A stretch of DNA of 64,000 bases from Octopus bimaculoides (lineage: Eukaryota): NCBI RefSeq assembly GCF_001194135.2, contig NC_068998.1, positions 15,612,142 through 15,676,141 of the forward strand. The letters are read 5' to 3'. A program made the position numbers and the translations under genes. The notes below the pieces were generated by a model, which was given only the letters and a program-made list of their open reading frames with translations, did not search any database and was not told the origin of the DNA. Below, one piece after another: positions 1-41,475 of this stretch. How positions within the stretch are numbered: position 1 is the stretch's first letter; the number at the start of each line of letters is the position of its first letter.

Positions 1-612
1 CTCTTTTGCCCAAACTGACTCATTTTTGATATCATTGAAAAATGATATCAGAAAGGTAAAAAAATAAAAGAGAAGTCATCGTTTTAAGTAAGATAGAAAG
101 AAAGATGTAGAATGATGATGATGTATACAGGTCTGTATTATTTGGACAAATATGTTTTCTTCTTTTTTTTAAGACAGTAAATTGTGATTTGAGGGCGATT
201 TGGTTGTTATTTCTAGCTGGTTGACCACATAGAAGTTCCCTTGTTGGCTTTAGGATTAAAGTTGTTGCTGGGAAATGGAATGAATGTCACTGAACTTATT
301 TAACTTCTGCCCATTCCTGCTGAAGTTGAAAGGGTTAATACTCTATTGCAGTACATACTTCTGCTAATGAAAGGTAAATTAATTCTAATTAACACATCTG
401 TGATGATCATCATCTTCATTTAGCATCCACTCTTCTATGCTTGTATAGGTCAGACAGAATTTGTTGAGGCAGATTTTCGACAACTGGTTGCCATTCCAGT
501 TGTCAACAGTCATCACCTGTTTTCAGGTAAGGCAAGATTTTCCCACACGTTTTTTGCAGAAGACTGGAAACGAACAACATTGGTTGTATGATGGCAATGT
601 TTGTTTATGACC

Positions 613-651
613 ATGATGTCAAGACATGGGTATGCACAAACATACACACAT

Positions 652-685
<34 letters not shown>

Positions 686-1160
686 ATACACATACACACA
701 TGCATACACATGTATACACATACACACATGCATACACAGACTCATTTACACAAACACATGCATACATATGCACATGCGTATACACACTCACATGGACACA
801 TGCACACAAATACACTCATATGCTTACACATGCACACACACACATGCATACATACATGCACACATGAATACACACACATGCATATACACACTCACATGCA
901 CACACACACACACACACATGTATACACATACACACATGCATACACATACACACTTGCATACACAGACTCATATACACACACAAACACATGCACATGCATA
1001 CACACACTAACATGGACACATGCACACAAATACACTCATATGCTTACACACATGCATACATACATGCACACATGAACACACACACATGTATATACACACT
1101 CACATGCACACACACACACATATGCATACATACGCACATGGATACCCACATTCATTCGCA
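613..1160. repeat. CA-rich compound minisatellite with ~220-bp higher-order period
   Basis: CATGGACACATGCACACAAATACACTCATATGCTTACACA occurs at 791 and 1011. The His/Thr and Cys/Val ORFs here are its translations. Confidence 0.85.
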
Positions 1161-1551
1161 CACACATTCATTTAATCACAACTGTACCTTAGATATAAAT
1201 AAACAAAATAATTAATGATATAAAATCAATGCTTCTCAACCATTTTTTACCTATTGACCCCTTTAATTCCCATTTTACTCAGATGGATCCTCTTAGCCAT
1301 TTAATGTTTAAAAAATCCTATTATATTTTTATAATTAAATATTATTTGGAAGTGTATAAAAAAATTTCCAAAAAAAATTTCCAAAATAATTTGTGTATCA
1401 TAGAAATATAAGCAATTTATAGCACATAAATTTTAACACCAAAATCTTATATGAAACCCCAAGTGCCATATGGAACCTGGTTGAGAATCACTGATATAAA
1501 TAATTGTCGACTGATTGATTGATTGATTGATTGGTTGATTTTTCTGTTTAC

Positions 1552-1885
1552 CTTCAAAAAAGTTATGTCCATGATATTGAGGCTCATAAGACTTGTGTTG
1601 AGCTGCATATTCAGGCTGCTTCCATAATCTAAAATAGCCCCACTCACCATTTAAAGAGAAATCTCCAAAGAATGAACCCTGTCGTGGAAAACTGGGATAT
1701 TGCCGGAAAGATTTCTGATGTGCAACCATAGGAGAATAAGAGTTATTTCTGCGACCATAATTCCACAAACCATTGTCATTCCAGCCATCATATTGGGGGT
1801 CTTGATTTCCATAGCCCAAATAATCTTCACCAACAGATAGCGTGTGTGAGATGAGTGTTATTGTAATAATTCCCAGAGTCCACAT
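1552..1885 (-). CDS. Coding exon of an uncharacterised, probably secreted aromatic/Gly/Asn-rich protein; further exon(s) not located
   Basis: Acceptor TGTTCTTTTTGTTCCAG| (exon starts 1899), ATG at 1885 with A at -3, 111 open codons MWTLGIITITLISHTLSVG-EDYLGYGNQ...HGHNFFE, donor GAAG|GTAAAC at 1552/1551. Not a microsatellite; visibly more GC-rich than its flanks. Confidence 0.7.
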
Positions 1886-1940
1886 TATGTTAGAATTATC
1901 TGGAACAAAAAGAACATATATATATATATATATATATATA

Positions 1941-2708
1941 GCTAGTAATTATAGACCAATCATGTGCTTACCATTGGTGTGGAAGCTGTTAAGAGGAATG
2001 CTCTCAGAAAGTATTTATGAGCACTTTGACAGCCAGAATTTGCTGCCAGAAGAACAAAAAGAATGTAGGAAGAAGGCACGATCTTTTATACAGAGACAAA
2101 GTAGTCCTAAAAGAAGTGAAATCTAGAATGAAAAATTTAGCAATAGCATGGATAGATTATGAGAAGGCCTATGACATAATTCTACACTCATGAATAAGTG
2201 GATGATTGAATATATTCAGTATTGCAGACAACATAAGAGAGTTAATTAGCTATAGCCTGAGGAAATGGAAAGTAGATCTCTACTCAGGTGACACAAGTCA
2301 TAAAAAAGAGACAGGTAATCAGCAGTGATTACACAGCCTGATTTAGTAGCAGTAGGCAAAAAGAAGAGAAAGTGCCAGGTAATTGACTTTACAGTCCCAA
2401 ATGATGAAAAAGTTAATATGAAAGGTGTAGAGAAAATAACAAAGTACCAGGACCGAGCCATTAAATTATAGAGGCTGTGGAAAGTGCGGGTAAAATGTAT
2501 CCCTGTAATTATAAGTGCATTAGGAACTATTCCTAAACAAATGGATTGAGGAAACAGGCATAAAACCTAGTTTAGTGCAGCTCCAAAAAAACAGTATTAT
2601 TAGGGACAGCTAGGATACTTGACATCTAAGGTTACTAGTTGTAACCCAATGGTAGGAATTTTTTCCCAACATTCTCATCTGTTGTGCAAATATGGAATAA
2701 TAATAATG
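1941..2708 (+). mobile_element. R4/Dong-like RLE non-LTR retrotransposon, 5'-truncated and internally deleted
   Basis: ASNYRPIMCLPLVWKLL..LLPEEQK and LAIAWIDYEKAYD (RT motifs) joined to PDLV..IDFTVP..K..KYQD..IPVII.ALGTIPK..LQKTVLLGTARIL (RLE endonuclease C-terminus). Has stops and frameshifts. (TA)n at 5' side, (TAA)n at 3' side. Confidence 0.8.
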
Positions 2709-5700
2709 ACGACGATGATGACAGCGATGACAACAACAAGGCCAGCAATTTTAGTGGGAAGGGTTCCATTGGTTATATCAACCCAGTACTTGATTGGTAC
2801 TTTATTTTATTGATCTTGAAAGGATAAAAACTAAGTCGACCTCCATCATTATCATCATCACCTCTCTTACTGATATCCTTGTCATCTTCGGATATCATTG
2901 TTCTCATCATTGATATCATCTTACTGTTTCCATCATCATTTGATTGTATTATTGTTATCACTACCATCAGCACTGTCATCATTTAACTGCCATTTTTGTC
3001 CAAAGTTGGATCTTGCAATATAATATCTTGTTCTAAGGTGGTGAGCTGGCAGAATTGTTAATATGCTTAGTGGCATTTCATTCATTTTCATGTACTGAGT
3101 TCAAATTCCACTGAGGTCGACTTTACCTTTCTTCTTTTGGGGGTTAATAAAATAAGTACCAGCTGAACTCTGGAGTTGATGTAATCGACTTACCCACTTC
3201 CCTGAAATTGCTGGCCTTGTGCCAAAATTCAACATCAGTATAGTATCTTGTTCTATCTATTTTCCAAATTTCTAGTAATATAACCTAAACTACTTCTTTA
3301 CCATGTTTTTCATTTATATTAGTTAATAAAATTGTAAATTAATTAAAATGGTATCAAACTACCTTTATACTATATATAAAATTTAAGAACTAGAATCACA
3401 ATGATTTATTTTCTAAATTCCATATAATTTCTTTAAAAAATCTTTGGAAATATAAAATAAAAATTTTAAAATACAAAACAAATGAGAAAATAGTCTCTTC
3501 AAGANNNNNNNNNNNNNNNNNNNNNNNNNNNNNNNNNNNNNNNNNNNNNNNNNNNNNNNNNNNNNNNNNNNNNNNNNNNNNNNNNNNNNNNNNNNNNNNN
3601 NNNNNNNNNNNNNNNNNNNNNNNNNNNNNNNNNNNNNNNNNNNNNNNNNNNNNNNNNNNNNNNNNNNNNNNNNNNNNNNNNNNNNNNNNNNNNNNNNNNN
3701 NNNNNNNNNNNNNNNNNNNNNNNNNNNNNNNNNNNNNNNNNNNNNNNNNTTTGGTAAATCTGCCTCAAGTGGTTTGCTAAAGATTTATTTATTTATTATG
3801 TTTACTTATTTATTTTTTATTTTATCTCTTTATTTTTAATTTAGCAAAAAAAAAAAAAAAAAGGCCAGAGTGCTTTTCTCTCCTTCTTTAAACAGTAGAA
3901 GTTAACTATGGAAGACAGACAAAATAATAATTTTAGCTTTCAAAGTATTTAATGTGTGTGTGTGTGTGTGTGCATGCACGCATATGTGTATGTACTGGTG
4001 TTCTTCCTACCACTAGCCACTCAGTTGTGGGGTAGGAGCAGAATAAGTAATTAGTCACACGAACCAATAGGCGCAGATGTGACAGTGTAGTAAGAAGCTT
4101 GCTTCCCAACCATATGGTTCCAGGTTCAGTCCCACTGTCGCACCTTAGGTAAGAGTCTTCTACTATAACCTTGGGCTGACAAAAGCCTTGTGAGTAGATT
4201 TGGTAAACAGAAACTGAAAGAAGCCCATTGTGTATGTAGATATTACCTGTGATGTGATCAGCCTGGTGTGCTTTTGATTAGGTGTCAGATGTGGCACCCA
4301 CCAAGAAGAAACCTTTGTCATGCTAAATTCATTGTGCAGAATATTCTCAACTCAATTATGGGATATGCTAAGAAAATTGGTTATTTGATTTATAGTCAAT
4401 CACCTAACATCCATCATCATGTGGTGAACATGGTCAATGTTTTCCTTGATGGTGACAGCTGCAGGGTGTCCAAACTTTGGGTCATATTCAAGGCTCTCCC
4501 TTTCCCTCCTAAATTCAGCTGTCCACTTTTAAAAGAATAGTTGAAATTAATGTATGCAAGATTCCACAGCTCAAGCATCACTCTGTCATTGTCGGCCTAC
4601 AAACTTTTCAGCCCACCCTTGTAAATACCAGGCTCAAAAAAATAAGCACTGGGGTTGACTTGTTCAACTAAAACCCCTCAAAGAGGTGCACCAGCATGGC
4701 CACAGTCCAATAACTGAAACGAGTAAGAAATAAAAGATAAATGACAAATAAATTGTAGTGCTGAAATTCTAGTTTGTAGATAAGATTTCATTTTAAAATC
4801 CTTATAACTACAATTTCATATCAATAAAACTTATGCTGTTGATGCTCTAAGTAAAAGCCATAACATTACAACTTTCTATTTCTGTTTCCTAATCTCCAAA
4901 AAGCTATTCAAGCTTCTTGATATTTTTCATAAATAATTAAACTATACAGCCATATCACAACTTAATAAATAAAATAAATAAGTTATACAAGAATACCTCA
5001 TCTTACATCAGTAATTGATTCCAAAATATGTGACTTAACTCGAGAAATGATGTAACATTAGAAATTCATTGAAATTTATTAAAAAAAGACTATTTTATTT
5101 AGAACAAGTAGAAAGATAAATTTTATTCAATGCATAGATACTGAACAGTATAGATATAAAGAATAAAATCCTTTTTTCTTCCTAAAAGCAGAAAAATTTG
5201 TTGGCAGCCTGATTTTCCTCTTCCACATCAGTTTCCAGATTTTTTTTTAATATTATACGCCTTTAAATTTGTTTGCTGAGACTGATATAAAGTCAGATAA
5301 ATCAACTGAAGTTGAGTTTTGTTTTCTCCTGGAAAAGACAATAGTTGAAACGACATAATTCAAGGTATATTTGTATTTCACTTATTCATAATGCTCATAA
5401 TGGTTATATTTATAAGTTTGTACCGAGGAAGTAGATAAAATCACCCGACTGAGCAAGTCAGTTGCAAATAACACCAACAAACCTGCATAAAGAATCTAAA
5501 TTTGCTGGCTCTGGAACTGAAAAAAACAGATAAAAATAATTTTTTTCGGCAGCTATGATGAACCATAGATAAAAATTGTCAAACTGAAGCTTGATAATAT
5601 TTCAAAAGTCTTCTTAGCTACATGTTTGCTCAATTAGATCAAGAAACCCAAGTGTCATTTCTACATTGACATTAGTAAGGAACCAGCTTGGAATAACTGG

Positions 5701-7823: not shown

Positions 7824-10800
7824 TGTCACTCCTCTGGAAATTAACCTCTGCCTGTTTTTTTTTCAAGAGAAACATCAGCTATGTTGGTCACTCTGGTTTC
7901 TGAGAGTCTATAAAGGTCATGGTCACAACTCCTTCATCCTGAACCAAACCTTTAAAAGAAACAGTTCTTCTCTTGTACCAAGAACTGTTCTTGTATTAAA
8001 TACACTCTAAATAACCTCTTTTGTAATAAATATACCTCTCTAGTGCTAAGTATCTTTTGCACAACATACTCCTTTTGTACTAAATCCTGATGTGTGGTAT
8101 TCAAAACAAACTTCATATCCAAATACAAAACTTTGCTCTTATCAATGTTGGTAACTTGAAATGCTATATTTTGATCACATTTACTGCTGATTCACATCCG
8201 TCCTCAACTTTTCATATGAACACATGAATAACTGCTTTATATTAATTTAAACTACTGTTTTATATGGCACAAAAGTTGTTTATATTACTTTAAAGTGCTG
8301 TGTAATAGTCTTTCCTATCAATGTTTTTTTTTTACTGTATTTTGTAATTGTCATAACTTGGACTGAATAGGTCTCCACTACAAGTAGAAAGTATAAAATA
8401 AAGATCATCATTGTTGTTGTCACCATTGTTTTAATGTTCATTTTTACATGGCTTTCTATGGCTTGATACTTTTCCTGTCATGAAACTTCATTTGTTTCTG
8501 AGTAAGGTAATGTTTCCGCTTTTCATGAAAAATTGGAAATGAACGACACTGCTTGAATGATGGTGACATTCGCTTACAACTATCACATGATGTCAAAACA
8601 AGGACACACACACACACAAACACAGCATACAAAACAACCTTCTTTCAATTTCCATCTACCAAATTTACTCACAAGGCCTTAATTGACCCAAGGTTGTGGT
8701 AGAAGACACTTTGATGAAAGTGCCACACAGTGGGACTGAACCTGAAACCATATGTCTGGGAAGCAAACTTCTTAACCATGCAGCTATATATTATAACAGA
8801 GAATAGTAGTAGACACTTGCTGAAGGTGCCACACAGTGGGACTGAACCCAGAACCATGTTGGAAAACAAGCTTCTTACCACAGCCACACCTGCACCTATC
8901 ACTTGTGTTTTTTTTTTTTTTAACTATTAGAAGTATCAAAGAGCTCAGTATTTTTGATTTCAGAGGAATGGGTAACTGGAGTAATGGCATTGAGGTGTTT
9001 TCCAATAGTATTTGTAAAGCAAGTGAAACAGCAACAATAAGATGCTTTGAGTATATTTTGAGAAATAAACAGGTTCTTCTGTCAGGCTATAAAATATTTA
9101 ATTAGAGAGCTTTTTGCATGTTTACACAAACTAATCAAACAAAATTCTTGTTTTATTGATGATGCACACAGAGAAATACCAATTGAATAGAATTCTTGTT
9201 TTATTGTCAGACAAACAGAAAAAAGTACAAAAAAAAAAAAAAGGAAAGAGAAATTGAAGAAACTTTTAAAGTTTCATCTTTATTAATGCATCCAATGTCT
9301 CTCAATATTACCAGATGAAAAATAGATACAGAAATGAGCCGCAACACAAACTTAGAGAAAAAATATATATTTATTAACGGCAAGAGATTTTTAATGCCAT
9401 GATGTGAAAAATGTCCATTTACAGATGACTTAAAGAAAGAGAATTGTATGTAAGTGTATGTGTGTTTAAGGTTCCTCTCACTCACCAAAAGTGGTGTCAA
9501 AATATAAACAGAAATGAAGGAGACAGTCCTTTATGTTAAATACAAACAACAAAGAACACACCTTGAATATCAATTCTCTAATTTAATGTAGATGGAAGAT
9601 TTAACTTTGTTGCTAAATAATAAATTCATCAACTTATATGAAGTGCTGCTTGAGTTAATTTAGCTGGTTTAAAGCAAAATCTGCAAATCTTTATGGTTGA
9701 GTTACAAATCGGATCTGTAGGCATTGCATAAATCTTTATAGAGTTATATAGGAAAATGCTATCCATACACAGTACAGAATTAAAGCAGACTGATTCATCA
9801 AATATTCAAACTGCAGAAGACCTTAGATGATCACATATTCAGAAGATTTTGTTGGAAAATGTATTTGAAGCTACAAAGGATAATGTATACTACATTCATT
9901 AAGCAAAGTAAACTGAAGAATTTATCCAATTAACTAATTGCTCAATGAATTCAATGAAAGGAAAAAAAAAAAAAAAGAATGGTTTTCAAAACTAACTATT
10001 TGTATAGGTAATTACATTTCTTTAAAATGTTGATTTACCCTAACGAGTAACATCAACTTTTCACTAATGACCTCATTTGTTTAGTGAATATTTTAAGTTA
10101 AGGAGATCTTTTTCAATCTTGGAAAATTTCCTTGAAAATAACAAGATCTAATCCCAAATCAGATCTGACTATGGTTGAATGGTTAAGATCTATTCGAGAT
10201 CTTATGTCATTAATGCCTGTTTTGAGATGCAAATATTGAATATCTATTTTGATATAATAATAAATACTACGCATTCCAAAACAGTCAAGTCTATAAAGAA
10301 CGAAAAATATGAATAAAAACAATCTTACAAAATAATCCATATAATCAGATTTCTTTCATTTAAAGATAAACAGTGAGTGTAAAATAAATCATTATAGTTT
10401 ATAACTGTAAACCAAAAATTAAGGGGTTACAATGACCATTTGCCAAATACTAGTTAACTTTTAAAATGGAAGTGACGTCTCAAAGTTTTAAATAGAGGTA
10501 AAAATCATTAAAATGAGAAATTTAAGACTTGGGGAAACAAATCTTTCAGACACATGCATGCCATTTCAGTTTACTTTGTTTATATAAGCTTAATTAAATC
10601 AAAGATGATTATTTAATTTATTTGAAGCATTAGAAACCCTAAAATAACACTGACATTGCTAATAGAAACTAATTCCTTCTTAGACTATAGTTCTATGAGG
10701 GCCTTGCTTTGCACCAAATCTAGTGAGAAAAGGAGGAAAAATAAAGTATGTTTTCAAAGTAATGGACGATATGTGTGACTTTAAACATAGTGTAGTAATG

Positions 10801-10834: not shown

Positions 10835-10974
10835 TCAACCATCTTGCTGTATAAAAGGATTTGGAATAGCTTCCATTCCATCAGCTGGACAAATAGATAC
10901 TACTGAGGTTCCTCGGCAAACTACTAAACCAAGCGTCCGAGTATCTTCAGTTAATTTGTATGGATCATCAGGGT
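10835..10974 (-). CDS. LSM7: LSm7, last coding exon
   Basis: DPDDPYKLTEDTRTLGLVVCRGTSVVSICPADGMEAIPNPFIQQDG*, near-identical to the metazoan LSm7 C-terminus. Acceptor TTTTTCCAG, phase 1. Confidence 0.97.
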
Positions 10975-11610
10975 CTGGAAAAAAGACAAAGAAATGAAAA
11001 AAATAAAGTAGGAATGGAAACCAAAAATGGAGATTTTTTTTGTCACTGGGAATTAATGGAACAGAACAATGAAAAGAACAATGGCTAGGTTTCCACAACA
11101 CAACACTGAATCTATAAATACTTCAAATGTATATCTACTTAAAGTCACCACCACCACCGTCATTGCCATCATCATTTAACATTTACTTTTCCATGCCTGC
11201 ATGGTTTGAATGGAATTTGTTCAGACAGATTTTTCTATAGCTGGATACCCTTCCTATTGTCAACCTTCATTTATTTCTAAACAAGGTAACATTTTTCTAT
11301 GGCCAGACATGATTTTCACAGGAAACAAACACCACAACTTGTGTGACTGATACTCGTTTACAACCATCACATGACGTCAAGACAAGGGTACACACAATAC
11401 CCACACATGTATATGACAGGCTTCTTTCAGTTTCCTTCTACTAAATCCACTCACAAGGGTTTGGTTGGCCTGGAGCTAAGACAGCTGCATTAGGTAGAGC
11501 ATCCAACTGTAGAAATCATGTCATATGACAATTGGGGTCTGGACAGCTCCTAGCTCCATGTCAAACTGTCCAACCCATGCCAGCATGGAAAGAAGGTGAT
11601 GATGATGACT

Positions 11611-12054
11611 TGCAAATTAGTTACAGTTCAGTTCAGTCTATTATCATTGAAGATTTGGGTATGAGGCATGCGTCTGCCAAGTTTGTGCCAAAACTGCTTT
11701 CAGCTGACCAAAAAGACATTCGGGTTTTAGTTGCACAAGATCCCTTCGAATGACACAAGAAGGATGAAAACTCTTCGAAAACTTTGTGTAAGCCCCTGAG
11801 CAGGTATCGCCAAGCTTTTGGCAAAATTTGATGCAGATTCTCTTCTCAAGTTTCTGTCAAGGTCAATGCAATGATCCCACACTACACACATTCCTTCAAA
11901 GCACTGCTGTAAACAGTGGAAGTGAGCTAGAATGTTAAAACTTAGTGCAGATACACAGCAGAATTCAAGGTCAATCCATGCCAAGCGGCATCACTCTGTG
12001 TGCTTTAGCTTCATGACTATGGAAACAGTCTGGATACTTGTCAATCAGACCATG
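11611..12054. mobile_element. Foldback mariner derivative, partial copy (LSM7 intron)
   Basis: Plus strand EDLGMRHASAKFVPKLLSADQK fused to an inverted mariner 5' end. TIR ..GATACTTGTCAATCAGACCATG followed by TA. Confidence 0.85.
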
Positions 12055-12351
12055 TATGTATATACTTGAGCTTCCACACAGTTTCTATCAATCAAATTCA
12101 CTTGAAAAAATTGGTTGACCCAGAGCTATAGTAGAAGGCACTTTCCCAAGGTGCTGCCCAGTAGGACAATGCGAAAGCATGAGGTTGTAAAGCTAGTTTC
12201 TTAACCACAAAACCAAACACATTTGCATCAGTGCAAAAATAATTAAGAGCGCAATCTTTTATCAGATGTTAAAATAAGTCAGTTTTATGTAAAAACAAAA
12301 GTTTCATGAACAATAAAAAAAATGAAAAATAAAAACAACAAACAAGCTTAC

Positions 12352-12423
12352 CTCTAAGATATTCAATTGTCCCATCTAACACAAGATTCAGTAAAGGATC
12401 ATGACCTTTAAGAATACCACTTA
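12352..12423 (-). CDS. LSM7: LSm7 internal exon
   Basis: (V)SGILKGHDPLLNLVLDGTIEYLR. ATTTCAG acceptor, GTAAGC donor, 72 nt, phase 1-1. Confidence 0.97.
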
Positions 12424-12561
12424 CTGAAATAAATAAATAGAAATATTTATTAAAAGAAAAGTTTATAGAAAGTAATAGCTCAAGGACAAGAGATAATAGC
12501 TCCAAGGTGACCAAAGCCTTGTGAGAGAATGTAGTAGAGAACCCAGGTTTGAAATTTCCCC

Positions 12562-12611
12562 AAAAGACCTGATGAAGGCTGGAGGGTATATCAACCGAAA
12601 CGTTGTGTTAA
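12562..12611 (+). ncRNA. Minimal type-I hammerhead ribozyme motif (Penelope-type), slightly degenerate
   Basis: CUGAUGA-A-GGCUG(10 nt)CAACC-GAAA-CGUU, with stem I AAGAC/GUGUU (one mismatch). Confidence 0.6.
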
Positions 12612-13019
12612 CAAACAAGATGAGGGCAAATATCTGTCAAATGTAAATAATGAAGAAAATGTTATAGTGATTAAATAAAAATAAGAATGAATGATTAATG
12701 TCAAGTTCAATAATAAGTTTATACATTAAAAACTACTTTTAATAATTCATATAAAAATGGGGAACTTCAGTGAGGTGAGTTGAAAATGTTGGATTAGTAG
12801 CTAGGTTAGTGGTTCACAGCTTGTCACTAATAGCAAAGTGTGTCCACAAACATATCCATCTCTTTATAGTCCAGCCAGTTGTAAATACATGAGACAGTTT
12901 ACTGATGAAAGCTGCAAGAACATCATAAAATAGGCATTGAATTTAAATATTTTCTCTTAGAAGTAAGTATTGTCAGGTTGATACACTACATGATGAGATC
13001 AATGGTCCACTAATCAGTC

Positions 13020-13210
13020 ATCATCATTTAATGTCAGTTTTCTATGCTGGGTTGGATGGTTTGGCCAGAGATGGCAAGACCAGGGGCTGCACCATGCTCC
13101 ATTGTTCAGGTATGATTTCTATGCCTGGATGCCCCTCCTAATGCCAACCGCTCCACAGAGTGTATTGGGTACTTTTTATGTGATACCAGTACCAGTGCTT
13201 TTAACATGGC
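13020..13210. mobile_element. Dispersed short repeat family C (CATCAT..TTTAAC..CCATGC..GGATGCCC..); orientation unresolved
   Basis: Related copies at ~410-640, 8420-8620, 11160-11400, 27240-27500 and inverted at 11500-11610 and 14260-14570. Confidence 0.7.
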
Positions 13211-13284
13211 AATAATTTGGCATCAGATTAATAACATGGTGTAAAAGAAAACAGAACAATATTTAGTAAGAAATAAAACATTAC

Positions 13285-13390
13285 CTTCTCTGCCGCCACT
13301 GAACTTTACGCGAATTCCTTTGTCTAAGTATTTAGACAAATCTAAGATAGTCTCCTTTCTTTTCCGTTCTTTGTTCTTGTCAGTAACAGA
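13285..13390 (-). CDS. LSM7: LSm7 exon 2
   Basis: SVTDKNKERKRKETILDLSKYLDKGIRVKFSGGRE. TTCCAACAG acceptor (phase 0), GTAATG donor (phase 1). Confidence 0.97.
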
Positions 13391-13481
13391 CTGTTGGAAT
13401 AGAATTGACAAACTGGTGAAATAAAAAGTTATCAAAGCCAGATATGTTAAGGATAAAAAAAAAAATTAAAAAAAAAAAAAG

Positions 13482-13822
13482 GCGTAGGAGTGGCTGTGTG
13501 GTAAGTAGCTTGCTTACCAACCACATGGTTTCGGGTTCAGTCCCACTGCGTGGCACCTTGGGCAAGTGTCTTCTACTATAGCCTTGGGCTGACCAAAGAC
13601 TTGTGAGTGGATTTGGTAGATGGAAACTGAAAGAAGCCCGTCGTATGTATGTATATATATACATATATGTATATATATGTGTGTGTGTGTGTTTGTACCC
13701 CCAACATCGCTTGACAACTGATGCTGGTGTGTTTACGTCCCCGTAACTTAGCGGTTCGGCAAAAGAGACCGATAGAATAAGTACTAAGCTTACAAAAGAA
13801 TAAGTCCTGGGGTCGATTTGCT
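13482..13822 (+). mobile_element. tRNA-derived CORE-like SINE family A with internal (TA/TG)n; best-preserved copy
   Basis: Head GGCGTAGGAGTGGCTGTGTGGTAAG..GGTTCAGTCCC, CORE-like GGCACCTTGGGCAAGTGTCTTC. About 20 copies on both strands, e.g. 4072, 8620-8900, 12060-12215, 15000, 17285, 22730, 23338, 24870, 25050, 28540-28815, 30525, 30700-31010, 42228, 52925, 60928, 62700-63265. Confidence 0.9.
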
Positions 13823-16034
13823 CTGTTGCTTTTATTTAACTAGTCTCTCTTCCCTAAGAATATATTTCACTGGAATTTCATTTGCAACCAATTTTTTTAT
13901 TTTTACATTTTGATCATTAACAATCATCAATTACTGAATTGCCCTTTAGTTTGACCCCAGTTCTTTCTTCTTTGCGACAACATTGAGATAAGTTAGAACC
14001 TGAACATCATAAATAAGACTTACTAAGAATCTGCCTGAGTTCTAAGTAAGACTTTTAAAAAATGCTGCTTTTCAATACTTTGCATTAGATGTCATCTTTT
14101 TTTCATTTCTTGTACCTCTTTCTGGCTGCGTAATCATGTACCTCCTCTATAGCAATACCCGTGTTTCTGTCTCCCTGTCACACTCTAACCTATTATCATC
14201 TGACACAAGGTTTCCTCCTCCAATGCCCCCTCCCCTCTCAAAATTCCTTGTCTGGCAATTTACTTGGGTGACCCTGCCAGTGTTGGTGCCATGTAAAAAG
14301 CATACAGTCTACACTGTAAAATGGTTGGCATTTGGAAGGGCAGCCAGCTGTAAAGATCATGCTAAAACTGACCTCGTCTATGCTGGTACCACATAAAAAG
14401 CACTCAATCCACTCTGCAGATAGGTTGCTGCTAGGAAAGGCATCCGGCCGTAAAAACCCTGCCAAAACAGACACAGTAGCTTGGAGTAGTCTTCTACCTG
14501 GCCAGCTCCTGTCAACCGTCCTACCCATGTATGCAGGGAAGACAGATGTTAAATGTCGATAATGACGATGTCTCTTCTGACATAAACTAAATATGCTTTT
14601 GAATGCACTTCATTGCAAATATAGGTGGTGGTGGTTGGAGGGGGGATGTAAAGAGAAAATATACAACACAGTATGTGTGAAACTACTATTGTTGAACATC
14701 GAACTGGATGTTTTATCAGTAACTAGATCTAAGCACTGTTCCAAGTTCAAGTCTCACCAGGCAAAATCCAGATATTACTGTTCGTCTTTTTTGGATAATT
14801 TTAACAACACTACTTTCTTACTTAAAGAAATTTGGTATTCTTTCAGCAATGGTATTTTAATTGGGTTTCAGATTCAATGAATTAGTTTTGAATTCTGTAC
14901 TGCAATTTAAGTTTCAGATTCACTACTTCTACCCCTGGTCTCTTTAGTGTCGTTATTTTGTTACTAATACTAACAATAGGGGCATTTCAGGTTCAATCCC
15001 ACAACACAGTACCTTGGGCAAGTATCTTCTAGCACAGTACTGAGCTTAATAATAAGTTGTGAGTTTGGTAAACAGAAACTGAATGAAGCCCATTATATAT
15101 ATGTGTGTGTGTGTGTGTGTTCCCTGCGCCAACTGACAACTGGTGTTGGTTTGTTTACAGTTCGACAAAAGAATTCGATAACAATAAGAAACATACTTAA
15201 AAAACAAAGAACTACTGATTTGTTTTGTCCTACTACACCCTTTAAGGTGGTGCCACAACATGAACATGGTCCAGGTATAATTTATAGAGCAATATGAGGT
15301 ATTCTAGACGATTCCTTCGCTACATATTGGCAAGAGTTTCTGGTGGAGTTTTGGAATGGCTGTCTCTCGGAGTACCATATTTCATGTGGAAGGAAAGAAT
15401 ATGGAAGTGAGGATTAAAAATCTAAAAATTTGAAAGACTATAAGATATGCGACTTTAAAGTACAAATATTCCAAAATTCTGCTGAGCTTCTTTGGTGACC
15501 ATTGCACAAATACGCTCTCTCTTTGGTTTCATTTTCTCGATAAGACATTATTACAGTCACGGGCAAATTGCGACCCGCGGGACTTGCTCAATGGCACACC
15601 TGAGCCGTGCCGTACTCTGAAACTTATGTTGTAAAACACGACTAATTAATTGTACCAATAGCAAATAATTAATGCACCAATACCGAAAGAAAATGAGAAA
15701 TTTTACATAGAGTCTTGTTTCAAAGTAACCAACAAAGCAGATTATGGAAAATGAGCTAGTTTTATGAAAACGAATAACCAACAAATCCATTAGAAATTAT
15801 AATTCTATCTCCTAAATTGAATCCCGTTTTAACAATGTACATTCATTATATTAAAACATTAAGCTTAGTGTGTGTATATATATATTATATACGTGACCAT
15901 TTTCAGAGAAAGAAAACACATTTCCATTTTGTATGTTAAACGACATGTGCGTGTTTGTAAGTTAAATTCTCTAAAAATAAAAGGGTATTACAATAGTGAA
16001 GACTAAATGGAAAGGATATTTAATTTATAATGAC

Positions 16035-16139
16035 CTGTTGTTGCTGCTGCTGCTGTTGTTGTTGTTGCTGTTGCTGTGGTTGTTGTTGAGGTTGCAATTC
16101 CGCAGGAGCGGCGCGTTTTTGTTGTTGTTGAAGCGACAT
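16035..16139 (-). CDS. LSM7: Candidate LSm7 first coding exon encoding a poly-Gln N-terminal extension
   Basis: CCAAAATGTCG start; MSLQQQQKRAAPAELQPQQQP(Q)14; 105 nt, phase 0 matching exon 2; mixed CAA/CAG codons; CpG-rich surroundings. Donor CAG|GTCATT is weak. Confidence 0.6.
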
Positions 16140-17241: not shown

Positions 17242-19579
17242 TGATGAATATTTACTGCTATACATTTCGGATAATATATACATATACGGCTGTGTGGTAA
17301 ATAGTTTGCTTACCAACCACATGGTTCCGGATTCAGTCCCATTGCGTGGTACCTTGGGCAAATGTCTTCTACTATTGTCTCGGGCCGACCAAAGCCTTGC
17401 AAGTGGATTTGGTAGACAGAAACTGAAAGAAGCCCGTCGTATGTGTGTGTATCTTTTTTATCTGTGTTTGTCCCCACCACCGATTAACAATCAATGTTGG
17501 TGTGTTTACGTCTCCGTAAGTAATCGGTTTGGCAAAAGCTACCGATACCATCTGAACAGTCTGTGGTCATCAGTGCTTCATTGTTTGCGTAGATGACATA
17601 TAGTACACCTAAAGTTTCGCTACATCTTAAAGCATTTGTCTACTCAATATTTATACAAACTGCACATCGTGTTTGCTAAAGATCAGAATATACTTCCCCA
17701 CACCACCACCAATCTCCAATTTTAATTGTAATTTCTTATGTGTCAACTCATTCCAAAGAAATATTTTGTTTTGAGTTGTCTCTTTTACCTTTGCTTTGTT
17801 TATTTAGACATTGTTCAACGATGTTTACCTCTCCACAAATATCGGTATCGCCTTATTTAATCAAAGTTATCGTATTTGCCCCATTAGGTTAGTTAGTATT
17901 TAATTCACAATGCCATTTCAAAAAATCGCTTAGTCAAGAGAGAAAGGCTGTACCCTTGACCTTTTACAACACTTCCATGACCAGTGGGTGGAAGGTGTTC
18001 TCAAATTGATAAATTGCCCAAATATTTGTAACTAAAGCACTCCGCCAAAAGCACCTTTAGTTGAATACGTTGTGGAGCCATATCATGTGACTCTACTCAG
18101 AAGGTTTTAATCTCATCTGACAGGAGACCCTGTATAAAGAATATATAAAACAAGGCTGTGACTTTAAATACCTTTGATGTGGTCACAAACATATATAAGC
18201 TGAATGACTATGGGGAAAGACTTGAACTCTTTGCTTTTGGGTTAGATGCTGATGCCTAATTAGGAACGTCACCGTTAGAATCTCTTTTGGTCTATTACAC
18301 GTTCTTAATGCGGCAGTGGAGGCACAAAGTTACTGCGTCCATAACTGAACGGAATAAGACACTGAAATATCTCAGTAAATTACATTTTTCAGGCGTGTAA
18401 CTTTTCAGTTATGCGGAGTTAGTCAAGGAAGTTTTTGATTTCGTCAGTGTTCCACTTCACTGAAGTATCATGATGCTAGGGAGTGTACTAGGCTGGTCCA
18501 ACGTTTCAGCCGCGCAGTCACCCACGATTATGCCATGCAAGTTTTGGGTCATCTCAATTTATTTTAGAAGGAAATGTTAATGTCTCATTGAACGATACAT
18601 AACTGACAGTGTCCATAACTTTTTATAGTTTTTTTTTATTAAAAAAATCCTTGTTTTCTTTACACGTTTTTTTTCTATATTCATACTTTTTACTTTTACA
18701 AATTGTATTAATTTTCACTGAATTGTTATTTTTGGGATTTTTATTGTAATAGTATTCTCAATACNNNNNNNNNNNNNNNNNNNNNNNNNNNNNNNNNNNN
18801 NNNNNNNNNNNNNNNNNNNNNNNNNNNNNNNNNNNNNNNNNNNNNNNNNNNNNNNNNNNNNNNNNNNNNNNNNNNNNNNNNNNNNNNNNNNNNNNNNNNN
18901 NNNNNNNNNNNNNNNNNNNNNNNNNNNNNNNNNNNNNNNNNNNNNNNNNNNNNNNNCAGTTAAACACTGGGATCGATTTAATCGACTCAGCAGCACCCTA
19001 AAACACGTTGACCATGTGCTAAAATTTGAAACCAATATTCGCAATACGGACAATTTGGAAACACTTCAATTCGCATTCCTTGACTCTTGGGAAAAGCATG
19101 AAAGTCAAGCAATCTCTTATTGCTTGCAACATAGATCTGAGTTCTTAAGTTTAAATAAAAAGATAAAATCCTTAATTAGGATTAGATATATACTTTTTAA
19201 AATCTAAAATCTAAAACTTAGTACTAGTCTAAAATTAAACACCCACCACAACCTTCGCATAAAGTTTATTCTGAATTATCTCCCTTAATAACAAGCGTCA
19301 ATCGATTTGTACGAAAATAATAACCGAATAACTATCTTAATCTTTTACTTGTTTTAGTAGAAATTAAATTTAAAGATAACAATTCAATTTTCCAATAGAG
19401 ATCATAAAAATTTATGACTCAACTAGTTTTGTAATTATTACAGGTTACTGGCGTTAATATTTACAGATATATATATTGTTTAAACCGATGAGATACTACG
19501 AAACTATCAAAAGTAATAAATCTGTCTGGACCATCCATTTCCTTACGAGACGAGATTGGCAAAATATTCGACCCCGGTT

Positions 19580-32796: not shown

Positions 32797-35040
32797 NNNN
32801 NNNNNNNNNNNNNNNNNNNNNNNNNNNNNNNNNNNNNNNNNNNNNNNNNNNNNNNNNNNNNNNNNNNNNNNNNNNNNNNNNNNNNNNNNNNNNNNNNNNN
32901 NNNNNNNNNNNNNNNNNNNNNNNNNNNNNNNNNNNNNNNNNNNNNNNNNNNNNNNNNNNNNNNNNNNNNNNNNNNNNNNNNNNNNNNNNNNNNNNNNNNN
33001 NNNNNNNNNNNNNNNNNNNNNNNNNNNNNNNNNNNNNNNNNNNNNNNNNNNNNNNNNNNNNNNNNNNNNNNNNNNNNNNNNNNNNNNNNNNNNNNNNNNN
33101 NNNNNNNNNNNNNNNNNNNNNNNNNNNNNNNNNNNNNNNNNNNNNNNNNNNNNNNNNNNNNNNNNNNNNNNNNNNNNNNNNNNNNNNNNNNNNNNNNNNN
33201 NNNNNNNNNNNNNNNNNNNNNNNNNNNNNNNNNNNNNNNNNNNNNNNNNNNNNNNNNNNNNNNNNNNNNNNNNNNNNNNNNNNNNNNNNNNNNNNNNNNN
33301 NNNNNNNNNNNNNNNNNNNNNNNNNNNNNNNNNNNNNNNNNNNNNNNNNNNNNNNNNNNNNNNNNNNNNNNNNNNNNNNNNNNNNNNNNNNNNNNNNNNN
33401 NNNNNNNNNNNNNNNNNNNNNNNNNNNNNNNNNNNNNNNNNNNNNNNNNNNNNNNNNNNNNNNNNNNNNNNNNNNNNNNNNNNNNNNNNNNNNNNNNNNN
33501 NNNNNNNNNNNNNNNNNNNNNNNNNNNNNNNNNNNNNNNNNNNNNNNNNNNNNNNNNNNNNNNNNNNNNNNNNNNNNNNNNNNNNNNNNNNNNNNNNNNN
33601 NNNNNNNNNNNNNNNNNNNNNNNNNNNNNNNNNNNNNNNNNNNNNNNNNNNNNNNNNNNNNNNNNNNNNNNNNNNNNNNNNNNNNNNNNATCCCAACACA
33701 ATTACACCACCACACCATACAACACCATACCATAAACACCACATCACATCACACCAGCACTGACCACTTACCAGCCCCACACCATCATCCACACGCCTAC
33801 ACATAACACATACGCACACGTCAAGGTCACCAGCCCTCTTCCACACGCACACACATGCTCTCTTATACACACGCACGCGCACCTTCGTTTTGGGATCACC
33901 GCTACTTTATTATCTCCCCTTCTTCTTAGCTCTCCTGTGTGACCCCTCTGTCTGACATTCGCCATGATAGATCGCTAGTCACTACACATTCTTTATTTTC
34001 TCAGAAGATACTTGCCTAAGTTGCTTCGCAGTGGGATTGAATCTAGAGTCGCATGGTATTGAAGCTAACGTCATAACATTATGACCACGCTTGCAACCTT
34101 ATAAAAATTCTATCAAAGACTTTTAATTGATGCTTTCTGTGACAATATTGATGTATTTCAATTCTGTTTAAATAACTAGAAAAAGAAGACCCTTACATTT
34201 CAACGAAAGAGGCATTAGAAAATATGCTTCTCTTCATTTGTGCATCTCCTTAAAATTTTAGGAGAGTGAGTAAGATGAATTGGTTTTGGCTTAAATCTGA
34301 AGTTGTAGCGAAGAGCCTTTTATGTGGTCACTCGATTTGCTTAAAGTGGTTGCAAAATCTCCCACAAATTATATATTTTATCGTCTTAAAAAAATAGAAC
34401 ACATTGGATAATGTGGTCCTGGTTCCAATCACAAGAATACCTTTGAGGATAAGCCTGCCTGCTTGAGCAGAGCTAAACCAGGGCTTAACAAAAATAGCTA
34501 AAAGAAACAAGGAAAGACAGGCGTGTCATCCGAGAAAGTAGGTCATCGTTATGTTTATATATTCAATGAAGTTTGTGAATACAGAGATTATTGTTAGTGG
34601 TTAGTGGGGGAAGAAAAAAAAGTAAAACAACAAAGAAACGAATCTTAAGTTCGTATACTACAGAACCTTGTGAAGAAAACATCTGGAAATGATATGTCAA
34701 CAAAACCATTTATGAAATACGAAACTCTGGCGATAAACCATTCTCAGTCGAAGCTATGTTCAAGGCATGCTCGTTGAGGTGATTCTGGAAAAAAAAAATA
34801 GCCACATCGAAGGTGTGTGAATTATATATATATATATATATGTAAGAAGTTAAAGGGATAAGTAAATCCAGAGAGATATCTATAAAGCACACGCAGTGTT
34901 AAACGAATTTGGTTAACTATATTCAACAATCAGATCCCAATAAATGGAAGTAGAATAAGCATCTAATGTAATTCTTCACGTATGACAAGTAAATCCAAAT
35001 ATCACTAAGAAGAATTTTAAGAAATTCTGAATATAAGACA

Positions 35041-36357: not shown

Positions 36358-37260
36358 CTGGCAGTGGAGAGCAATCGCCATATTCCCTTCCATGTCGGAT
36401 ACCTCTGATGAGCGTATTTATATAATNNNNNNNNNNNNNNNNNNNNNNNNNNNNNNNNNNNNNNNNNNNNNNNNNNNNNNNNNNNNNNNNNNNNNNNNNN
36501 NNNNNNNNNNNNNNNNNNNNNNNNNNNNNNNNNNNNNNNNNNNNNNNATATATATATATATATATATATATATGTGCATATATACATATATGCACACACA
36601 CACATATATATGCACATGCATGAACATGTACATGCATGAACATGTACATGCATACATTATATACGTAAATATACATATACGATGTGTACATACGTACACA
36701 CAAACACACGCGCTCGCACACACATAATCAAACTAATTCCATTAATATGAAACACATTTCTTACTATTTTTTCCTTGTCTGATACAGGATTTCCTGCTTT
36801 TCTCTCACACTCTACTCACTGAACAATTCTCTCTCTCCCTCTCTCTCTGTCCTCTCACTTTCTCACCTCTTTCTTTTCTTCTTTTCTTTTTCTTCCTTCT
36901 TCTGCAGAGAAAATCGTAACAAATTAAATTATCGTTGGTTGTGTAAAACATTAATGAGGAAATCTAGATTCTCGTGTCTCTAACCAGAGGCGCTAACAAG
37001 AATAATATTATCAATAAATAGCAATAACAACACGCAACAGTAGAATACACAACAACAACAACAACAACAACAACTCCGACAGTAGCGATAACAGAAACGA
37101 CCACAAGAACAGCAGCAACAACTCTTATTACAGCGTTTGCAACTGCTATAGCTGCAATGATAACAACAACACCAGCAACAACAACTCCAACAATAGCAAC
37201 AACAATAACAACTTCAGTAATAGCAAAAACAACATCGACTAGCGTTTGCAACAGTGATAA

Positions 37261-39461: not shown

Positions 39462-39730
39462 GGTGTGNNNNNNNNNNNNNNNNNNNNNNNNNNNNNNNNN
39501 NNNNNNNNNNNNNNNNNNNNNNNNNNNNNNNNNNNNNNNNNNNNNNNNNNNNNNNNNNNNNNNNNNNNNNNNNNNNNNNNNNNNNNNNNNNNNNNNNNNN
39601 NNNNNNNNNNNNNNNNNNNNNNNNNNNNNNNNNNNNNNNNNNNNNNNNNNNNNNNNGACGATGATGATGATGGTGGTGGTGGTGGTGGTGTGGTGATGAT
39701 GATGATGATGACGATGATGATGACGACGAC

Positions 39731-41034: not shown

Positions 41035-41475
41035 CATCATCATCATTATCACCGTCATCGTCATCGACATCGTCTTCGTCGTCGTAGTCGTCGTGGTCGT
41101 CGTCCTCGTCCTCCTCGTCCTCGTCCTCGTCGTCCTCGTCCTCCTCGTCCTCGTCCTCCTCCTCCTCGTCCTCCTCGTCCTCGTCCTCCTTCTCGTCCTC
41201 GTCCTCCTCCTCGTCCTCCTCGTCCTCCTCCTTCTCGTCCTCCTCGTCCTCCTCCTCCTCATCGTCATCGTCATCCTCGTCATTGGTCGTCGTCGGTGTC
41301 GTTGTCGTCGTCATTGTCGTCGTCATCATGGTCNNNNNNNNNNNNNNNNNNNNNNNNNNNNNNNNNNNNNNNNNNNNNNNNNNNNNNNNNNNNNNNNNNN
41401 NNNNNNNNNNNNNNNNNNNNNNNNNNNNNNNNNNNCACCACCACCACCAACAACAACAACAACAACAACAACAAC
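41035..41475. repeat. (CGT/CCT)n and (CAA)n trinucleotide arrays spanning a gap
   Basis: Source of the apparent poly-Asp/Glu and poly-Leu/Val ORFs. Confidence 0.9.

What the first reader, a model, noticed from the sequence alone, without database searches (positions are those of the whole stretch)
1552..1899. Unrecognised secreted protein with mussel-foot-protein-3-like composition
Seen: a cleanly bounded minus-strand exon encoding a 19-aa hydrophobic leader ending SVG (fits the -3/-1 signal-peptidase rule), then 92 Cys-free residues with 10 Tyr, 8 Phe, 4 Trp and 10 Gly: EDYLGYGNQDPQYDGWNDNGLWNYGRRNNSY... Known: mussel Mfp-3 adhesives carry GWNNG and YGRR motifs; squid beak and sucker proteins are also aromatic/Gly-rich coacervating proteins; G-R-R is also an amidation/dibasic site of neuropeptide precursors. 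Inference: a lineage-specific structural or adhesive (possibly DOPA-modified) protein, or a precursor releasing an ...LWNY-amide peptide. The Mfp-3 likeness may be only compositional. The exon is also open from its first base, so the Met could be internal.
Basis: partly seen in the sequence, partly recalled or inferred. Interest (0 to 1): 0.75.

Follow-up and report, generated by a model that had tools for sequence, protein, structure and literature searches.

The report
First exon of octopus secreted VWA protein
The flagged stretch is the real first coding exon of an already annotated but unstudied Octopus bimaculoides gene: it encodes a secretion signal and a fast-evolving, aromatic-rich tail in front of a von Willebrand-A domain, and it is neither a mussel-glue relative nor a neuropeptide precursor.

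Summary
Window 1899..1552 (minus strand) is an exon with ATG at 1885. It encodes a 19-aa leader ending SVG, then 92 Cys-free residues (10 Y, 8 F, 4 W, 10 G).

It is aa 1-111 (100% identity) of XP_052830463.1, "uncharacterized protein LOC106881823 [Octopus bimaculoides]", 342 aa. Exons 2-4 lie just past window position 1 and encode a conserved Cys-Cys helix and a divergent VWA domain (Pfam PF00092, E 3.5e-10).

The same four-exon gene exists in O. sinensis and Argonauta hians. An mRNA homologue is assembled from Sepia esculenta larval RNA-seq. Nothing else matched among 5.8 billion proteins, so on present data the family is known only from coleoid cephalopods.

The GRR site is GGR in O. sinensis and absent in Argonauta and Sepia, which rules out a conserved amidated peptide. 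The Mfp-3 likeness is one weak local match in O. bimaculoides only (E 0.045). The tail's net charge is -2, against +11 for Mfp-3.

What is conserved in the tail is the leader, the "ED" start, an N-x-S/T sequon at N47, a GSFFGDFSLNGEWGYFRLW core (Octopus and Argonauta only) and the NFFE|DF junction.

Best reading: a secreted matrix or adhesion-type VWA protein with a rapidly evolving disordered N-terminal tail. Tissue and binding partners are unknown. Interest is modest.

The parts
1552..1899 (-). First coding exon of Octopus bimaculoides LOC106881823 (XP_052830463.1): 14 nt of 5' leader plus codons 1-111 and the first base of codon 112.
   Evidence: 100% match to aa 1-111 of P0001. Exon-intron structure reconstructed to give exactly the annotated protein.
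1900..1915 (-). Pyrimidine tract plus AG (gttctttttgttccAG): probable 3' splice site joining an unlocated 5'-UTR exon.
   Evidence: Identical in O. sinensis. Conserved as ttattctgttctAG in Argonauta, with the same 14-nt spacing to the ATG, while sequence further upstream does not align. Inferred; no transcript seen.
1883..1885 (-). Start codon (A at -3).
   Evidence: Start of the gene models for O. bimaculoides (two: XP_052830463.1 and the older truncated P0006), O. sinensis and Argonauta. In Sepia mRNAs the orthologous Met is the first in-frame ATG after in-frame stops.
1829..1885 (-). Signal peptide, aa 1-19 (MWTLGIITITLISHTLSVG), with predicted cleavage before E20-D21.
   Evidence: The hydrophobic core has a 9-residue Kyte-Doolittle mean of 2.6. 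Small residues sit at -3 and -1. An equivalent leader followed by 'ED' occurs in Argonauta and Sepia. This is a heuristic; no SignalP was run.
1553..1828 (-). 92-aa Cys-free, aromatic-rich (24% Y+F+W), N/Q/G/P-rich, slightly acidic N-terminal tail (aa 20-111).
   Evidence: Composition. It evolves about 2.4 times faster than the rest of the protein and carries indels.
1739..1747 (-). N47-N-S sequon, a candidate N-glycosylation site.
   Evidence: N47 is invariant and is followed by x-S/T in all four species: NNS, NNS, NLT, NFT (sequon scan).
1748..1756 (-).
   Evidence: Not conserved: GGR in O. sinensis, replaced in Argonauta and Sepia.
1646..1647 (-). GT of an internal alternative 5' splice site (AAT G|GTGAGT, same phase as the main donor).
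   Evidence: O. sinensis isoform X2 (P0007) joins ...FSLN directly to DFAKAF, skipping 32 aa. The same nucleotides are present here. Use in O. bimaculoides was not shown.
1550..1551 (-). GT of the exon-1 donor (GAAG|GTAAAC), phase 1.
   Evidence: Required to reproduce the annotated protein. Conserved in O. sinensis and Argonauta.
1..1549 (-). First part of intron 1 (1870 nt in all), including a (TGAT)n and a long degenerate (CA)n array. Exons 2-4 lie 319 to about 3100 nt beyond window position 1.
   Evidence: L001 position x corresponds to window 11886-x. Exons lie at L001 12205-12335, 13844-14120 and 14714-15000. Repeats.
1916..2650 (+). (TA)12 followed by a degraded non-LTR reverse-transcriptase fragment, directly upstream of the exon.
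   Evidence: RVT_1 E 1e-4, 22.5 bits, below Pfam's cut-off. The fragment is shared with O. sinensis, which has a further insertion of about 1.7 kb at the (TA)n. The right-hand limit of about 2650 is read by eye.

Best explanation
SHOWN: Window 1899..1552 (minus strand) is the first coding exon of a four-coding-exon gene, Octopus bimaculoides LOC106881823. The exon supplies the start codon, a cleavable secretion signal (aa 1-19) and a 92-residue Cys-free, aromatic-, Asn/Gln/Gly/Pro-rich tail. The other three exons lie just outside the window. [quoted passage not shown] All eight cysteines are there, along with an invariant but imperfect metal-site motif (D151-x-S153-x-Q155 with T233 and D263).

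INFERRED mechanism: the product enters the secretory pathway and loses its leader before E20. It is N-glycosylated at the conserved N47 sequon and disulfide-bonded in the C-terminal part. Outside the cell it acts as a matrix or adhesion-type protein. The VWA domain is the specific, possibly cation-assisted, protein-binding module. The fast-evolving, probably disordered tail adds weak multivalent aromatic contacts or serves as a glycosylated spacer. An internal donor (window 1648|1647), used in O. sinensis, can remove the last 32 tail residues. The family is known only from coleoid cephalopods (Octopus, Argonauta, Sepia).
For: Identity: an exhaustive HMMER search gave one true hit, P0001, 342 aa, 100% over aa 1-111. 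It is named XP_052830463.1/LOC106881823 and located on GCA_001194135.2 CM046618.1.

Gene structure: canonical GT-AG introns reproduce the annotated proteins in three genomes.

Domain: Pfam VWA 40.8 bits against a cut-off of 23.8, aa 148-322.

Conservation: O. sinensis 95%, Argonauta 70-75%, Sepia about 50%. There are 120+ invariant columns, nearly all C-terminal.

Purifying selection: dN/dS is 0.23-0.56 between the two Octopus species. Against Argonauta, dN is 0.27 in the tail and 0.12 in the rest, with dS saturated.

Transcription: the cuttlefish homologue sits on about 1.45-kb intronless Logan contigs; the index lists it in 37 blocks, 24 contigs were read and six are held. Three of the six SRR accessions checked are named in Sepia esculenta papers, and the one I read used hatched larvae.

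Start codon and leader: confirmed by in-frame stops upstream in those mRNAs.

Metal-site alignment: the profile alignment to complement C2a pairs LLLDLSSQMS with LLLDCSQSVS, and LLITDG with ILLTDG.

Sequon and Cys positions.

Alternative donor.
Against: No expression, tissue or protein-level data for the octopus gene were obtainable. The extracellular matrix/adhesion role rests only on the domain type and the signal peptide. Both AlphaFold models were unusable (mean pLDDT 31.6 and 37.7), so the VWA fold is supported by the Pfam HMM alone. PDB sequence and profile searches gave nothing significant (best E 0.55). The third MIDAS serine is replaced by Gln, so metal dependence is uncertain. The 5'-UTR exon implied by the conserved acceptor was not found. 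Signal-peptide cleavage is a rule-based call.
Confidence: 0.85

Rival explanations
1. The tail is a functional analogue of mussel foot protein 3. Its tyrosines are converted to DOPA, or otherwise cross-linked, and it serves as the adhesive/cohesive or coacervating part of an octopod cement or structural material, with the VWA domain anchoring it to the matrix.
For: The tail is 24% aromatic, Cys-free and secreted. There is a local GWN(D)NG(L)WN.GR match to Mfp-3 in O. bimaculoides. VWA proteins do occur in molluscan secreted matrices such as Pif/BMSP shell proteins. From my own knowledge, mussel byssal PTMP1 is another example.
Against: The match is 9/21 identities, E 0.045 for a single comparison. 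The shuffle fraction is 0.016 in O. bimaculoides, 0.10 in O. sinensis and about 0.5 in Argonauta and Sepia. Net charge is -2 against +11. Gly is 11% against 26%, Tyr 11% against 22%, and Arg+Lys 9% against 26%. The motif is not conserved (SWANNDRWN in Argonauta). The Sepia tail has only 3 Tyr in 64 residues. Aromatic spacing is no more even than in shuffles.
Confidence: 0.08
2. The exon encodes a neuropeptide or peptide-hormone precursor that is cleaved at G-R-R to release an ...LWNY-amide peptide.
For: A signal peptide followed by ...NGLWNY-G-R-R in O. bimaculoides.
Against: R45 is Gly in O. sinensis (YGGR). The whole site is absent in Argonauta (WNPADV) and Sepia. The residue just after it is instead a conserved N-glycosylation sequon. 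The precursor would carry a 230-aa disulfide-rich VWA domain, which is unlike known neuropeptide precursors. There are no other flanked repeats.
Confidence: 0.02
3. The ORF is a chance open frame, a pseudo-exon, or derived from the adjacent retrotransposon rather than a functional coding exon.
For: Open frames of 150 aa or more are not rare in this repeat-rich window. A degraded RT fragment and microsatellites abut both ends. No paralogue in the window, and no Pfam hit for the exon alone.
Against: Orthologous exons of the same length and phase, with conserved splice sites, occur in three genomes. dN is well below dS. An orthologous mRNA exists in cuttlefish. Exon identity between the Octopus species is 97%, against 91-94% in the flanks.
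Confidence: 0.01
4. It is a biomineral or chitin-matrix protein of the Pif/BMSP kind, acting in the stylet, cuttlebone or eggcase matrix.
For: A secreted single-VWA protein in a mollusc. A published survey reports that the O. bimaculoides BMSP-subfamily member has a single VWA domain. Expressed in cuttlefish hatchlings, which are building a cuttlebone.
Against: No chitin-binding or laminin-G domain was found by Pfam. Neither the protein nor its profile retrieved any Pif/BMSP or other molluscan VWA protein at E<=0.01. Pif and BMSP homologues were reported absent from the argonaut eggcase matrix, yet Argonauta keeps this gene.
Confidence: 0.07

Closest known systems
[quoted passage not shown]
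   Same: Residues 148-322 match the VWA model above Pfam's cut-off. The hallmark LLLD.S... and LLITDG strands are present, as are the Thr and second Asp of the metal site. There is a signal peptide and disulfide-forming cysteines.
   Different: Very divergent: 40.8 bits, and no PDB relative by sequence or profile (best E 0.55, complement C2). The third MIDAS residue is an invariant Gln instead of Ser. It has a unique conserved Cys-Cys helix and a low-complexity aromatic tail in front. Only four 90%-identity clusters exist among 5.8 billion proteins.
Mussel foot protein 3 (Mfp-3; sequence Q9GUX8 as printed in PMC9287526)
   Same: Secreted, Cys-free, rich in Tyr, Trp, Gly and Asn. One local match, Y.GWN(D)NG(L)W..GR, in the O. 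bimaculoides sequence.
   Different: Mfp-3 is a stand-alone 46-aa mature protein of net charge +11, with 26% Gly, 22% Tyr and 26% Arg+Lys. The tail here is 92 aa fused to a VWA domain, with net charge -2, 11% Gly, 11% Tyr, plus 9% Phe and 9% Gln, both of which Mfp-3 lacks. The similarity is not significant in the orthologues, so there is no homology.
Molluscan VWA matrix proteins (Pif/BMSP shell proteins; byssal PTMP1, the latter from my own knowledge)
   Same: Molluscan secreted proteins in which VWA domains organise an extracellular material. They suggest a working analogy for a matrix-binding role.
   Different: Those proteins carry chitin-binding or laminin-G domains, or tandem VWA domains. 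This one has a single VWA and no such domains. No sequence link to them was retrieved.
Neuropeptide precursors with Gly-dibasic amidation sites
   Same: Signal peptide followed by a G-R-R site in one species.
   Different: The site is not conserved. The precursor is a folded VWA protein, and no repeated flanked peptides are present.

Membership tests
VWA domain superfamily (PF00092) | Sequence matches the family HMM above the curated threshold | tested here: met
   PF00092 E 3.5e-10, 40.8 bits against a cut-off of 23.8, aa 148-322 covering profile positions 4-166 of 174. Precomputed VWA hits exist for all four orthologue clusters.
VWA domain superfamily (PF00092) | MIDAS metal site DxSxS ... 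T ... D | tested here: inconclusive
   D151, S153, T233 and D263 are invariant, but the fifth residue is an invariant Gln155, giving DxSxQ. Metal binding cannot be decided from sequence.
VWA domain superfamily (PF00092) | Alternating beta-alpha Rossmann-like fold | tested here: inconclusive
   The AlphaFold models had mean pLDDT 31.6 and 37.7. The order of secondary-structure elements is compatible, but the models are too poor for a fold search.
Mussel foot protein 3 | Detectable sequence homology conserved across orthologues | tested here: not met
   BLASTP E 0.045 for a single comparison. The fraction of shuffles reaching the score is 0.016, 0.10, 0.53 and 0.55 for O. bimaculoides, O. sinensis, Argonauta and Sepia.
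Mussel foot protein 3 | Small (about 5-7 kDa), strongly basic, Gly/Tyr/Arg/Asn-dominated stand-alone protein | tested here: not met
   The mature protein is 323 aa and 37.6 kDa. The tail has pI 6.1 and net charge -2, against +11 for Mfp-3.
Mussel foot protein 3 | Tyr to DOPA (and Arg hydroxylation) in the native protein | not testable with these tools
   Requires mass spectrometry of native material.
Amidated neuropeptide precursor | Conserved Gly-(Lys/Arg)2 processing site flanking a conserved peptide | tested here: not met
   GRR in O. bimaculoides; GGR in O. sinensis; absent in Argonauta and Sepia.
Pif/BMSP shell-matrix family | VWA combined with chitin-binding (and RLCD/LamG) domains, or tandem VWA domains | tested here: not met
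   Only one VWA domain was found and no other Pfam domain. Family definition taken from PMC11291548 and bioRxiv 10.1101/2021.07.10.451900.
Pif/BMSP shell-matrix family | VWA domain groups with the Pif/BMSP clade in a phylogeny | not tested
   No Pif/BMSP sequences were fetched. Neither the protein nor its profile retrieved any at E<=0.01.
Suckerins and squid beak His-rich proteins | Modular Gly/Tyr/His- and Ala/His-rich repeats | tested here: not met
   The tail has 3% Ala and 4% His, and no GGY-type tandem modules. Only three dispersed P-x-Y motifs are present. No direct sequence comparison with a suckerin was run.

The most novel reading that the evidence does not exclude
The aromatic tail could be a post-translationally modified module (DOPA, or sulfotyrosine at the acidic EDY, PQYD and PEY sites). 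It would give a coleoid-specific VWA protein adhesive or phase-separating behaviour, for example in egg-stalk cement, sucker lining or another octopod secretion. That would be an independent cephalopod solution combining, in one chain, what mussels split between Mfps and VWA matrix proteins. The unusual DxSxQ metal site might provide a new binding mode.
Probability: 0.08. Interest if true: 0.6.

Novelty: new member of a known kind. Interest (0 to 1): 0.25.

Why it matters
It turns an intriguing-looking orphan peptide into a definite annotation: exon 1 of a secreted VWA-domain protein known only from coleoid cephalopods. Two attractive but wrong readings, a mussel-glue homologue and an amidated neuropeptide, are removed. 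The remaining points of interest are limited:

- The family is very narrow (Octopus, Argonauta, Sepia) and highly divergent. It has an invariant non-canonical metal-site motif and a rapidly evolving aromatic tail.
- It could be one of the lineage-specific extracellular proteins behind cephalopod-specific tissues.
- Nothing here shows an unusual mechanism, and octopus has over a hundred VWA-domain proteins (PMC11291548).

Tried and rejected
- **Word-indexed protein search with the exon alone.** No candidates. The exhaustive HMMER search was needed to find the gene model.
- **P0002 and P0003 from that search.** These are artefacts. One weak match of about 28 bits and 31% identity to a tandem-repeat unit was counted many times over.
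- **Pfam on the exon alone.** Nothing.
- **Exact look-ups.** The read-through 150-aa ORF is not on record, and neither is isoform X2.
- **Paralogues in the window.** None.
- **Literature.** Searches for peptide substrings and for the LOC, XP and UniProt identifiers gave no papers. [quoted passage not shown]
- **Structure.** Two AlphaFold runs, on the full protein and on the VWA part, had alignments too shallow (4-5 sequences) and gave pLDDT 31.6 and 37.7. No fold search was run, because matches to such models are meaningless.
- **PDB sequence and profile searches.** Nothing significant.
- **Locating the 5'-UTR exon.** blastn of the Argonauta upstream region and the Sepia mRNA 5' UTR against the octopus upstream region found only the neighbouring LSM gene's last exon and a block carrying a conserved AATAAA, which I read as its 3'-UTR end.
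- **Aromatic 'sticker' spacing.** Not significantly more even than in shuffles.
- **Rfam on the window.** No family reached its threshold.

Full report
**1. The observation**

The minus strand of window 1552..1899 reads ttgttccag|ATAATTCTAACATAATG...TTTGAAG|gtaaac. From the ATG at 1885 it encodes MWTLGIITITLISHTLSVG followed by 92 residues.

The frame stays open through the first exon base, back to a stop near 1950. Without splicing it would run on through a (TGAT)n microsatellite to a stop at 1433. ORF length alone proves little, because stop-to-stop frames of 150 aa or more are common in this microsatellite-rich window. The decision had to come from relatives.

**2. What it is**

The word-indexed protein search found nothing, and Pfam found nothing in the exon. 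The exhaustive HMMER scan of 1.84 billion representatives gave one real hit: P0001, 342 aa, 100% identical over residues 1-111. The other two hits, P0002 and P0003, are tandem-repeat artefacts in which one match of about 28 bits is counted many times.

P0001 is XP_052830463.1, "uncharacterized protein LOC106881823 [Octopus bimaculoides]". Its 90% cluster also holds:
- O. sinensis LOC118766263 isoform X1;
- an O. vulgaris model that UniProt labels "VWFA domain-containing protein";
- an older, truncated O. bimaculoides model.

The gene lies on GCA_001194135.2 CM046618.1, and the window overlaps that locus: L001 position x equals window 11886-x.

I reconstructed the exon-intron structure so that the translation equals the annotated protein. 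There are four coding exons at L001 10001-10334, 12205-12335, 13844-14120 and 14714-15000, with canonical GT-AG introns. Exon 1 is the flagged stretch. Its donor is window 1552|1551, in phase 1, giving FFE|D. Intron 1 is 1870 nt, so exons 2-4 lie 319 to about 3100 nt beyond window position 1.

Residues 148-322 match Pfam VWA at 40.8 bits against a cut-off of 23.8.

**3. Relatives and conservation**

Searching with the whole protein, and then with a family profile, retrieved only four clusters among 5.8 billion proteins:
- the Octopus cluster;
- O. sinensis isoform X2;
- Argonauta hians Ahia01_000862400 (343 aa, 70-75% identity);
- P0009, 306 aa as called.

P0009 is found on intronless contigs of about 1.45 kb; the index lists it in 37 Logan blocks, 24 contigs were read, and six are held as L002-L007. 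Three of the six run accessions I checked are named in Sepia esculenta papers. The one I read, PMC10141105, used hatched larvae. The family therefore spans octopods and a cuttlefish, and it is transcribed.

The O. sinensis and Argonauta genes have the same four exons and the same intron phases.

In the Sepia mRNAs the gene caller chose a second Met. The first in-frame ATG after upstream stops gives MLWKISTGLVTMLVLQQAVC|EDEN..., which is an orthologous leader followed by the same "ED".

Upstream of the exon, the pyrimidine tract, the AG and the 14-nt distance to the ATG are conserved in Argonauta, while everything further upstream is unalignable. The Octopus species also carry a degraded RT fragment at that point, and O. 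sinensis has an extra insertion of about 1.7 kb. I infer a real acceptor and an upstream non-coding exon, which I could not locate.

**4. The tail**

Between the two Octopus species the tail has 5 replacements in 92 residues, with dN/dS 0.56 against 0.23 for the rest of the protein. Against Argonauta, dN is 0.27 in the tail and 0.12 in the rest, synonymous sites are saturated, and there are several indels. So the tail is coding and under constraint, but it evolves about 2.4 times faster than the VWA part.

What is conserved in the tail:
- the leader and the ED start;
- P-x-Y motifs;
- N47, which is followed by x-S/T in all four species (NNS, NNS, NLT, NFT), making a probable N-glycosylation site;
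- the core GS(F/L)FGDFS(L/M)NGEWG(Y/F)FRLW, in Octopus and Argonauta only;
- the NFFE|DF junction.

The Sepia tail is shorter (64 aa) and has only 3 Tyr, 1 Trp and 2 Gly, although it is still 20% aromatic and Cys-free. The Tyr/Trp/Gly-rich look is therefore an octopod elaboration of a variable region.

O. sinensis isoform X2 removes the last 32 tail residues through an internal donor AAT G|GTGAGT. That donor is present unchanged in this window at 1648|1647.

**5.

*Amidated peptide.* R45 is Gly in O. sinensis, and the site is absent in Argonauta and Sepia. The hypothesis is rejected.

*Mfp-3 likeness.* I used the Mfp-3 sequence printed in PMC9287526 (Q9GUX8). BLASTP gives one 21-residue match with 9 identities, at E 0.045 for that single comparison. 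The local alignment score beats all but 1.6% of shuffles for O. bimaculoides. For the orthologues the figures are 10%, 53% and 55%.

Composition also differs:

| Property | Tail | Mfp-3 |
|---|---|---|
| Net charge | -2 | +11 |
| Gly | 11% | 26% |
| Tyr | 11% | 22% |
| Arg+Lys | 9% | 26% |

The tail also has abundant Phe and Gln, which Mfp-3 lacks. The resemblance is partial, compositional and species-specific; it is not homology. A functional analogy (sticky aromatic tail) is not excluded, but nothing specific supports it. Aromatic spacing is not more regular than chance.

**6. The rest of the protein and the likely mechanism**

All eight cysteines (121, 122, 176, 231, 268, 321, 336, 339) lie in residues 112-342, and seven of the eight are invariant; position 121 is Ser in O. 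sinensis.

The profile alignment to complement C2a pairs LLLDLSSQMS with LLLDCSQSVS, and LLITDG with ILLTDG. The metal site is therefore D151-x-S153-x-Q155, with T233 and D263 all invariant. That is four of the five canonical MIDAS residues.

Both AlphaFold models were unusable, and no PDB relative was detectable by sequence. The fold assignment therefore rests on the Pfam HMM.

My inference is as follows. This is a secreted, N-glycosylated, disulfide-bonded extracellular protein. Its VWA domain binds a matrix or cell-surface partner, possibly with cation assistance. Its disordered aromatic tail adds weak multivalent contacts or acts as a spacer that can be shortened by alternative splicing. 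Tissue, partner and modifications are unknown. The gene was not listed in an O. vulgaris skin-mucus proteome.

**7. Verdict**

- Observation: confirmed.
- Interpretation: partly supported. The protein is secreted, lineage-specific and uncharacterised. It is not unrecognised, not Mfp-3-like in any testable sense, and not a neuropeptide precursor.
- Classification: a new, very divergent and taxonomically narrow member of a known kind, the secreted VWA-domain proteins, of which O. bimaculoides has over a hundred (PMC11291548).
- Interest: modest.

Noticed in passing
window 10838-16139, minus strand (exons about 16139-16077, 13390-13283, 12424-12347, 10978-10838): The upstream neighbour is an LSM-domain gene, LSm7-like by my reading, with a Gln-rich N-terminal extension. 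The Pfam LSM hit is E 7e-15. Synteny with the VWA gene is conserved in Argonauta (L009 2830-4294).
   Followed up: partly
window about 9355-9442 (L001 2444-2531): A roughly 100-nt block is 76% identical between Octopus and Argonauta. It contains a conserved AATAAA and is most likely the polyadenylation region of the LSM gene's 3' UTR. It is not the missing 5' exon of the VWA gene.
   Followed up: partly
window 1916-2650 (+) and L008 8284-9961: A (TA)12 run and a degraded non-LTR RT fragment (RVT_1 22.5 bits, below threshold) lie 17 nt upstream of the exon. The fragment is shared with O. sinensis, which has a further insertion of about 1.7 kb at the (TA)n. This suggests the region is intronic rather than a promoter.
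   Followed up: partly
window 632-1139: A long degenerate (CA)n/ACACACAT array with higher-order periods of 40-208 nt inside intron 1. It generates several spurious ORFs of 140-150 aa.
   Followed up: no
window about 3040-3230 and about 410-560: Elements that I recognise from memory as the abundant octopus SINE (gttcaaattccactgaggtcgactttacctttc...; ...tggatgctaaatgaagatgatgat). They fit the cephalopod origin later confirmed by the database hit.
   Followed up: no
window 3505-3749, 18765-18956, 32797-33689, 36427-36547, 39468-39656, 41334-41435, 51215-51409, 54778-55047, 59822-59831, 61915-62060: Ten assembly gaps (runs of N). Many of the longest 'ORFs' in the window are artefacts of these gaps or of microsatellites.
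   Followed up: yes
P0005 (O. vulgaris CAI9736132.1): The O. vulgaris gene model starts at the residue equivalent to M53 (MVARQ...). It lacks the signal peptide and the first third of the tail, so it is probably a mis-annotated start.
   Followed up: no
L002-L007 (Sepia esculenta mRNA contigs), e.g. L002 195-227: The gene caller's start for P0009 is the second in-frame Met. The upstream Met adds 11 residues (MLWKISTGLVT) and restores a full signal peptide, so the true product is probably 317 aa.
   Followed up: yes
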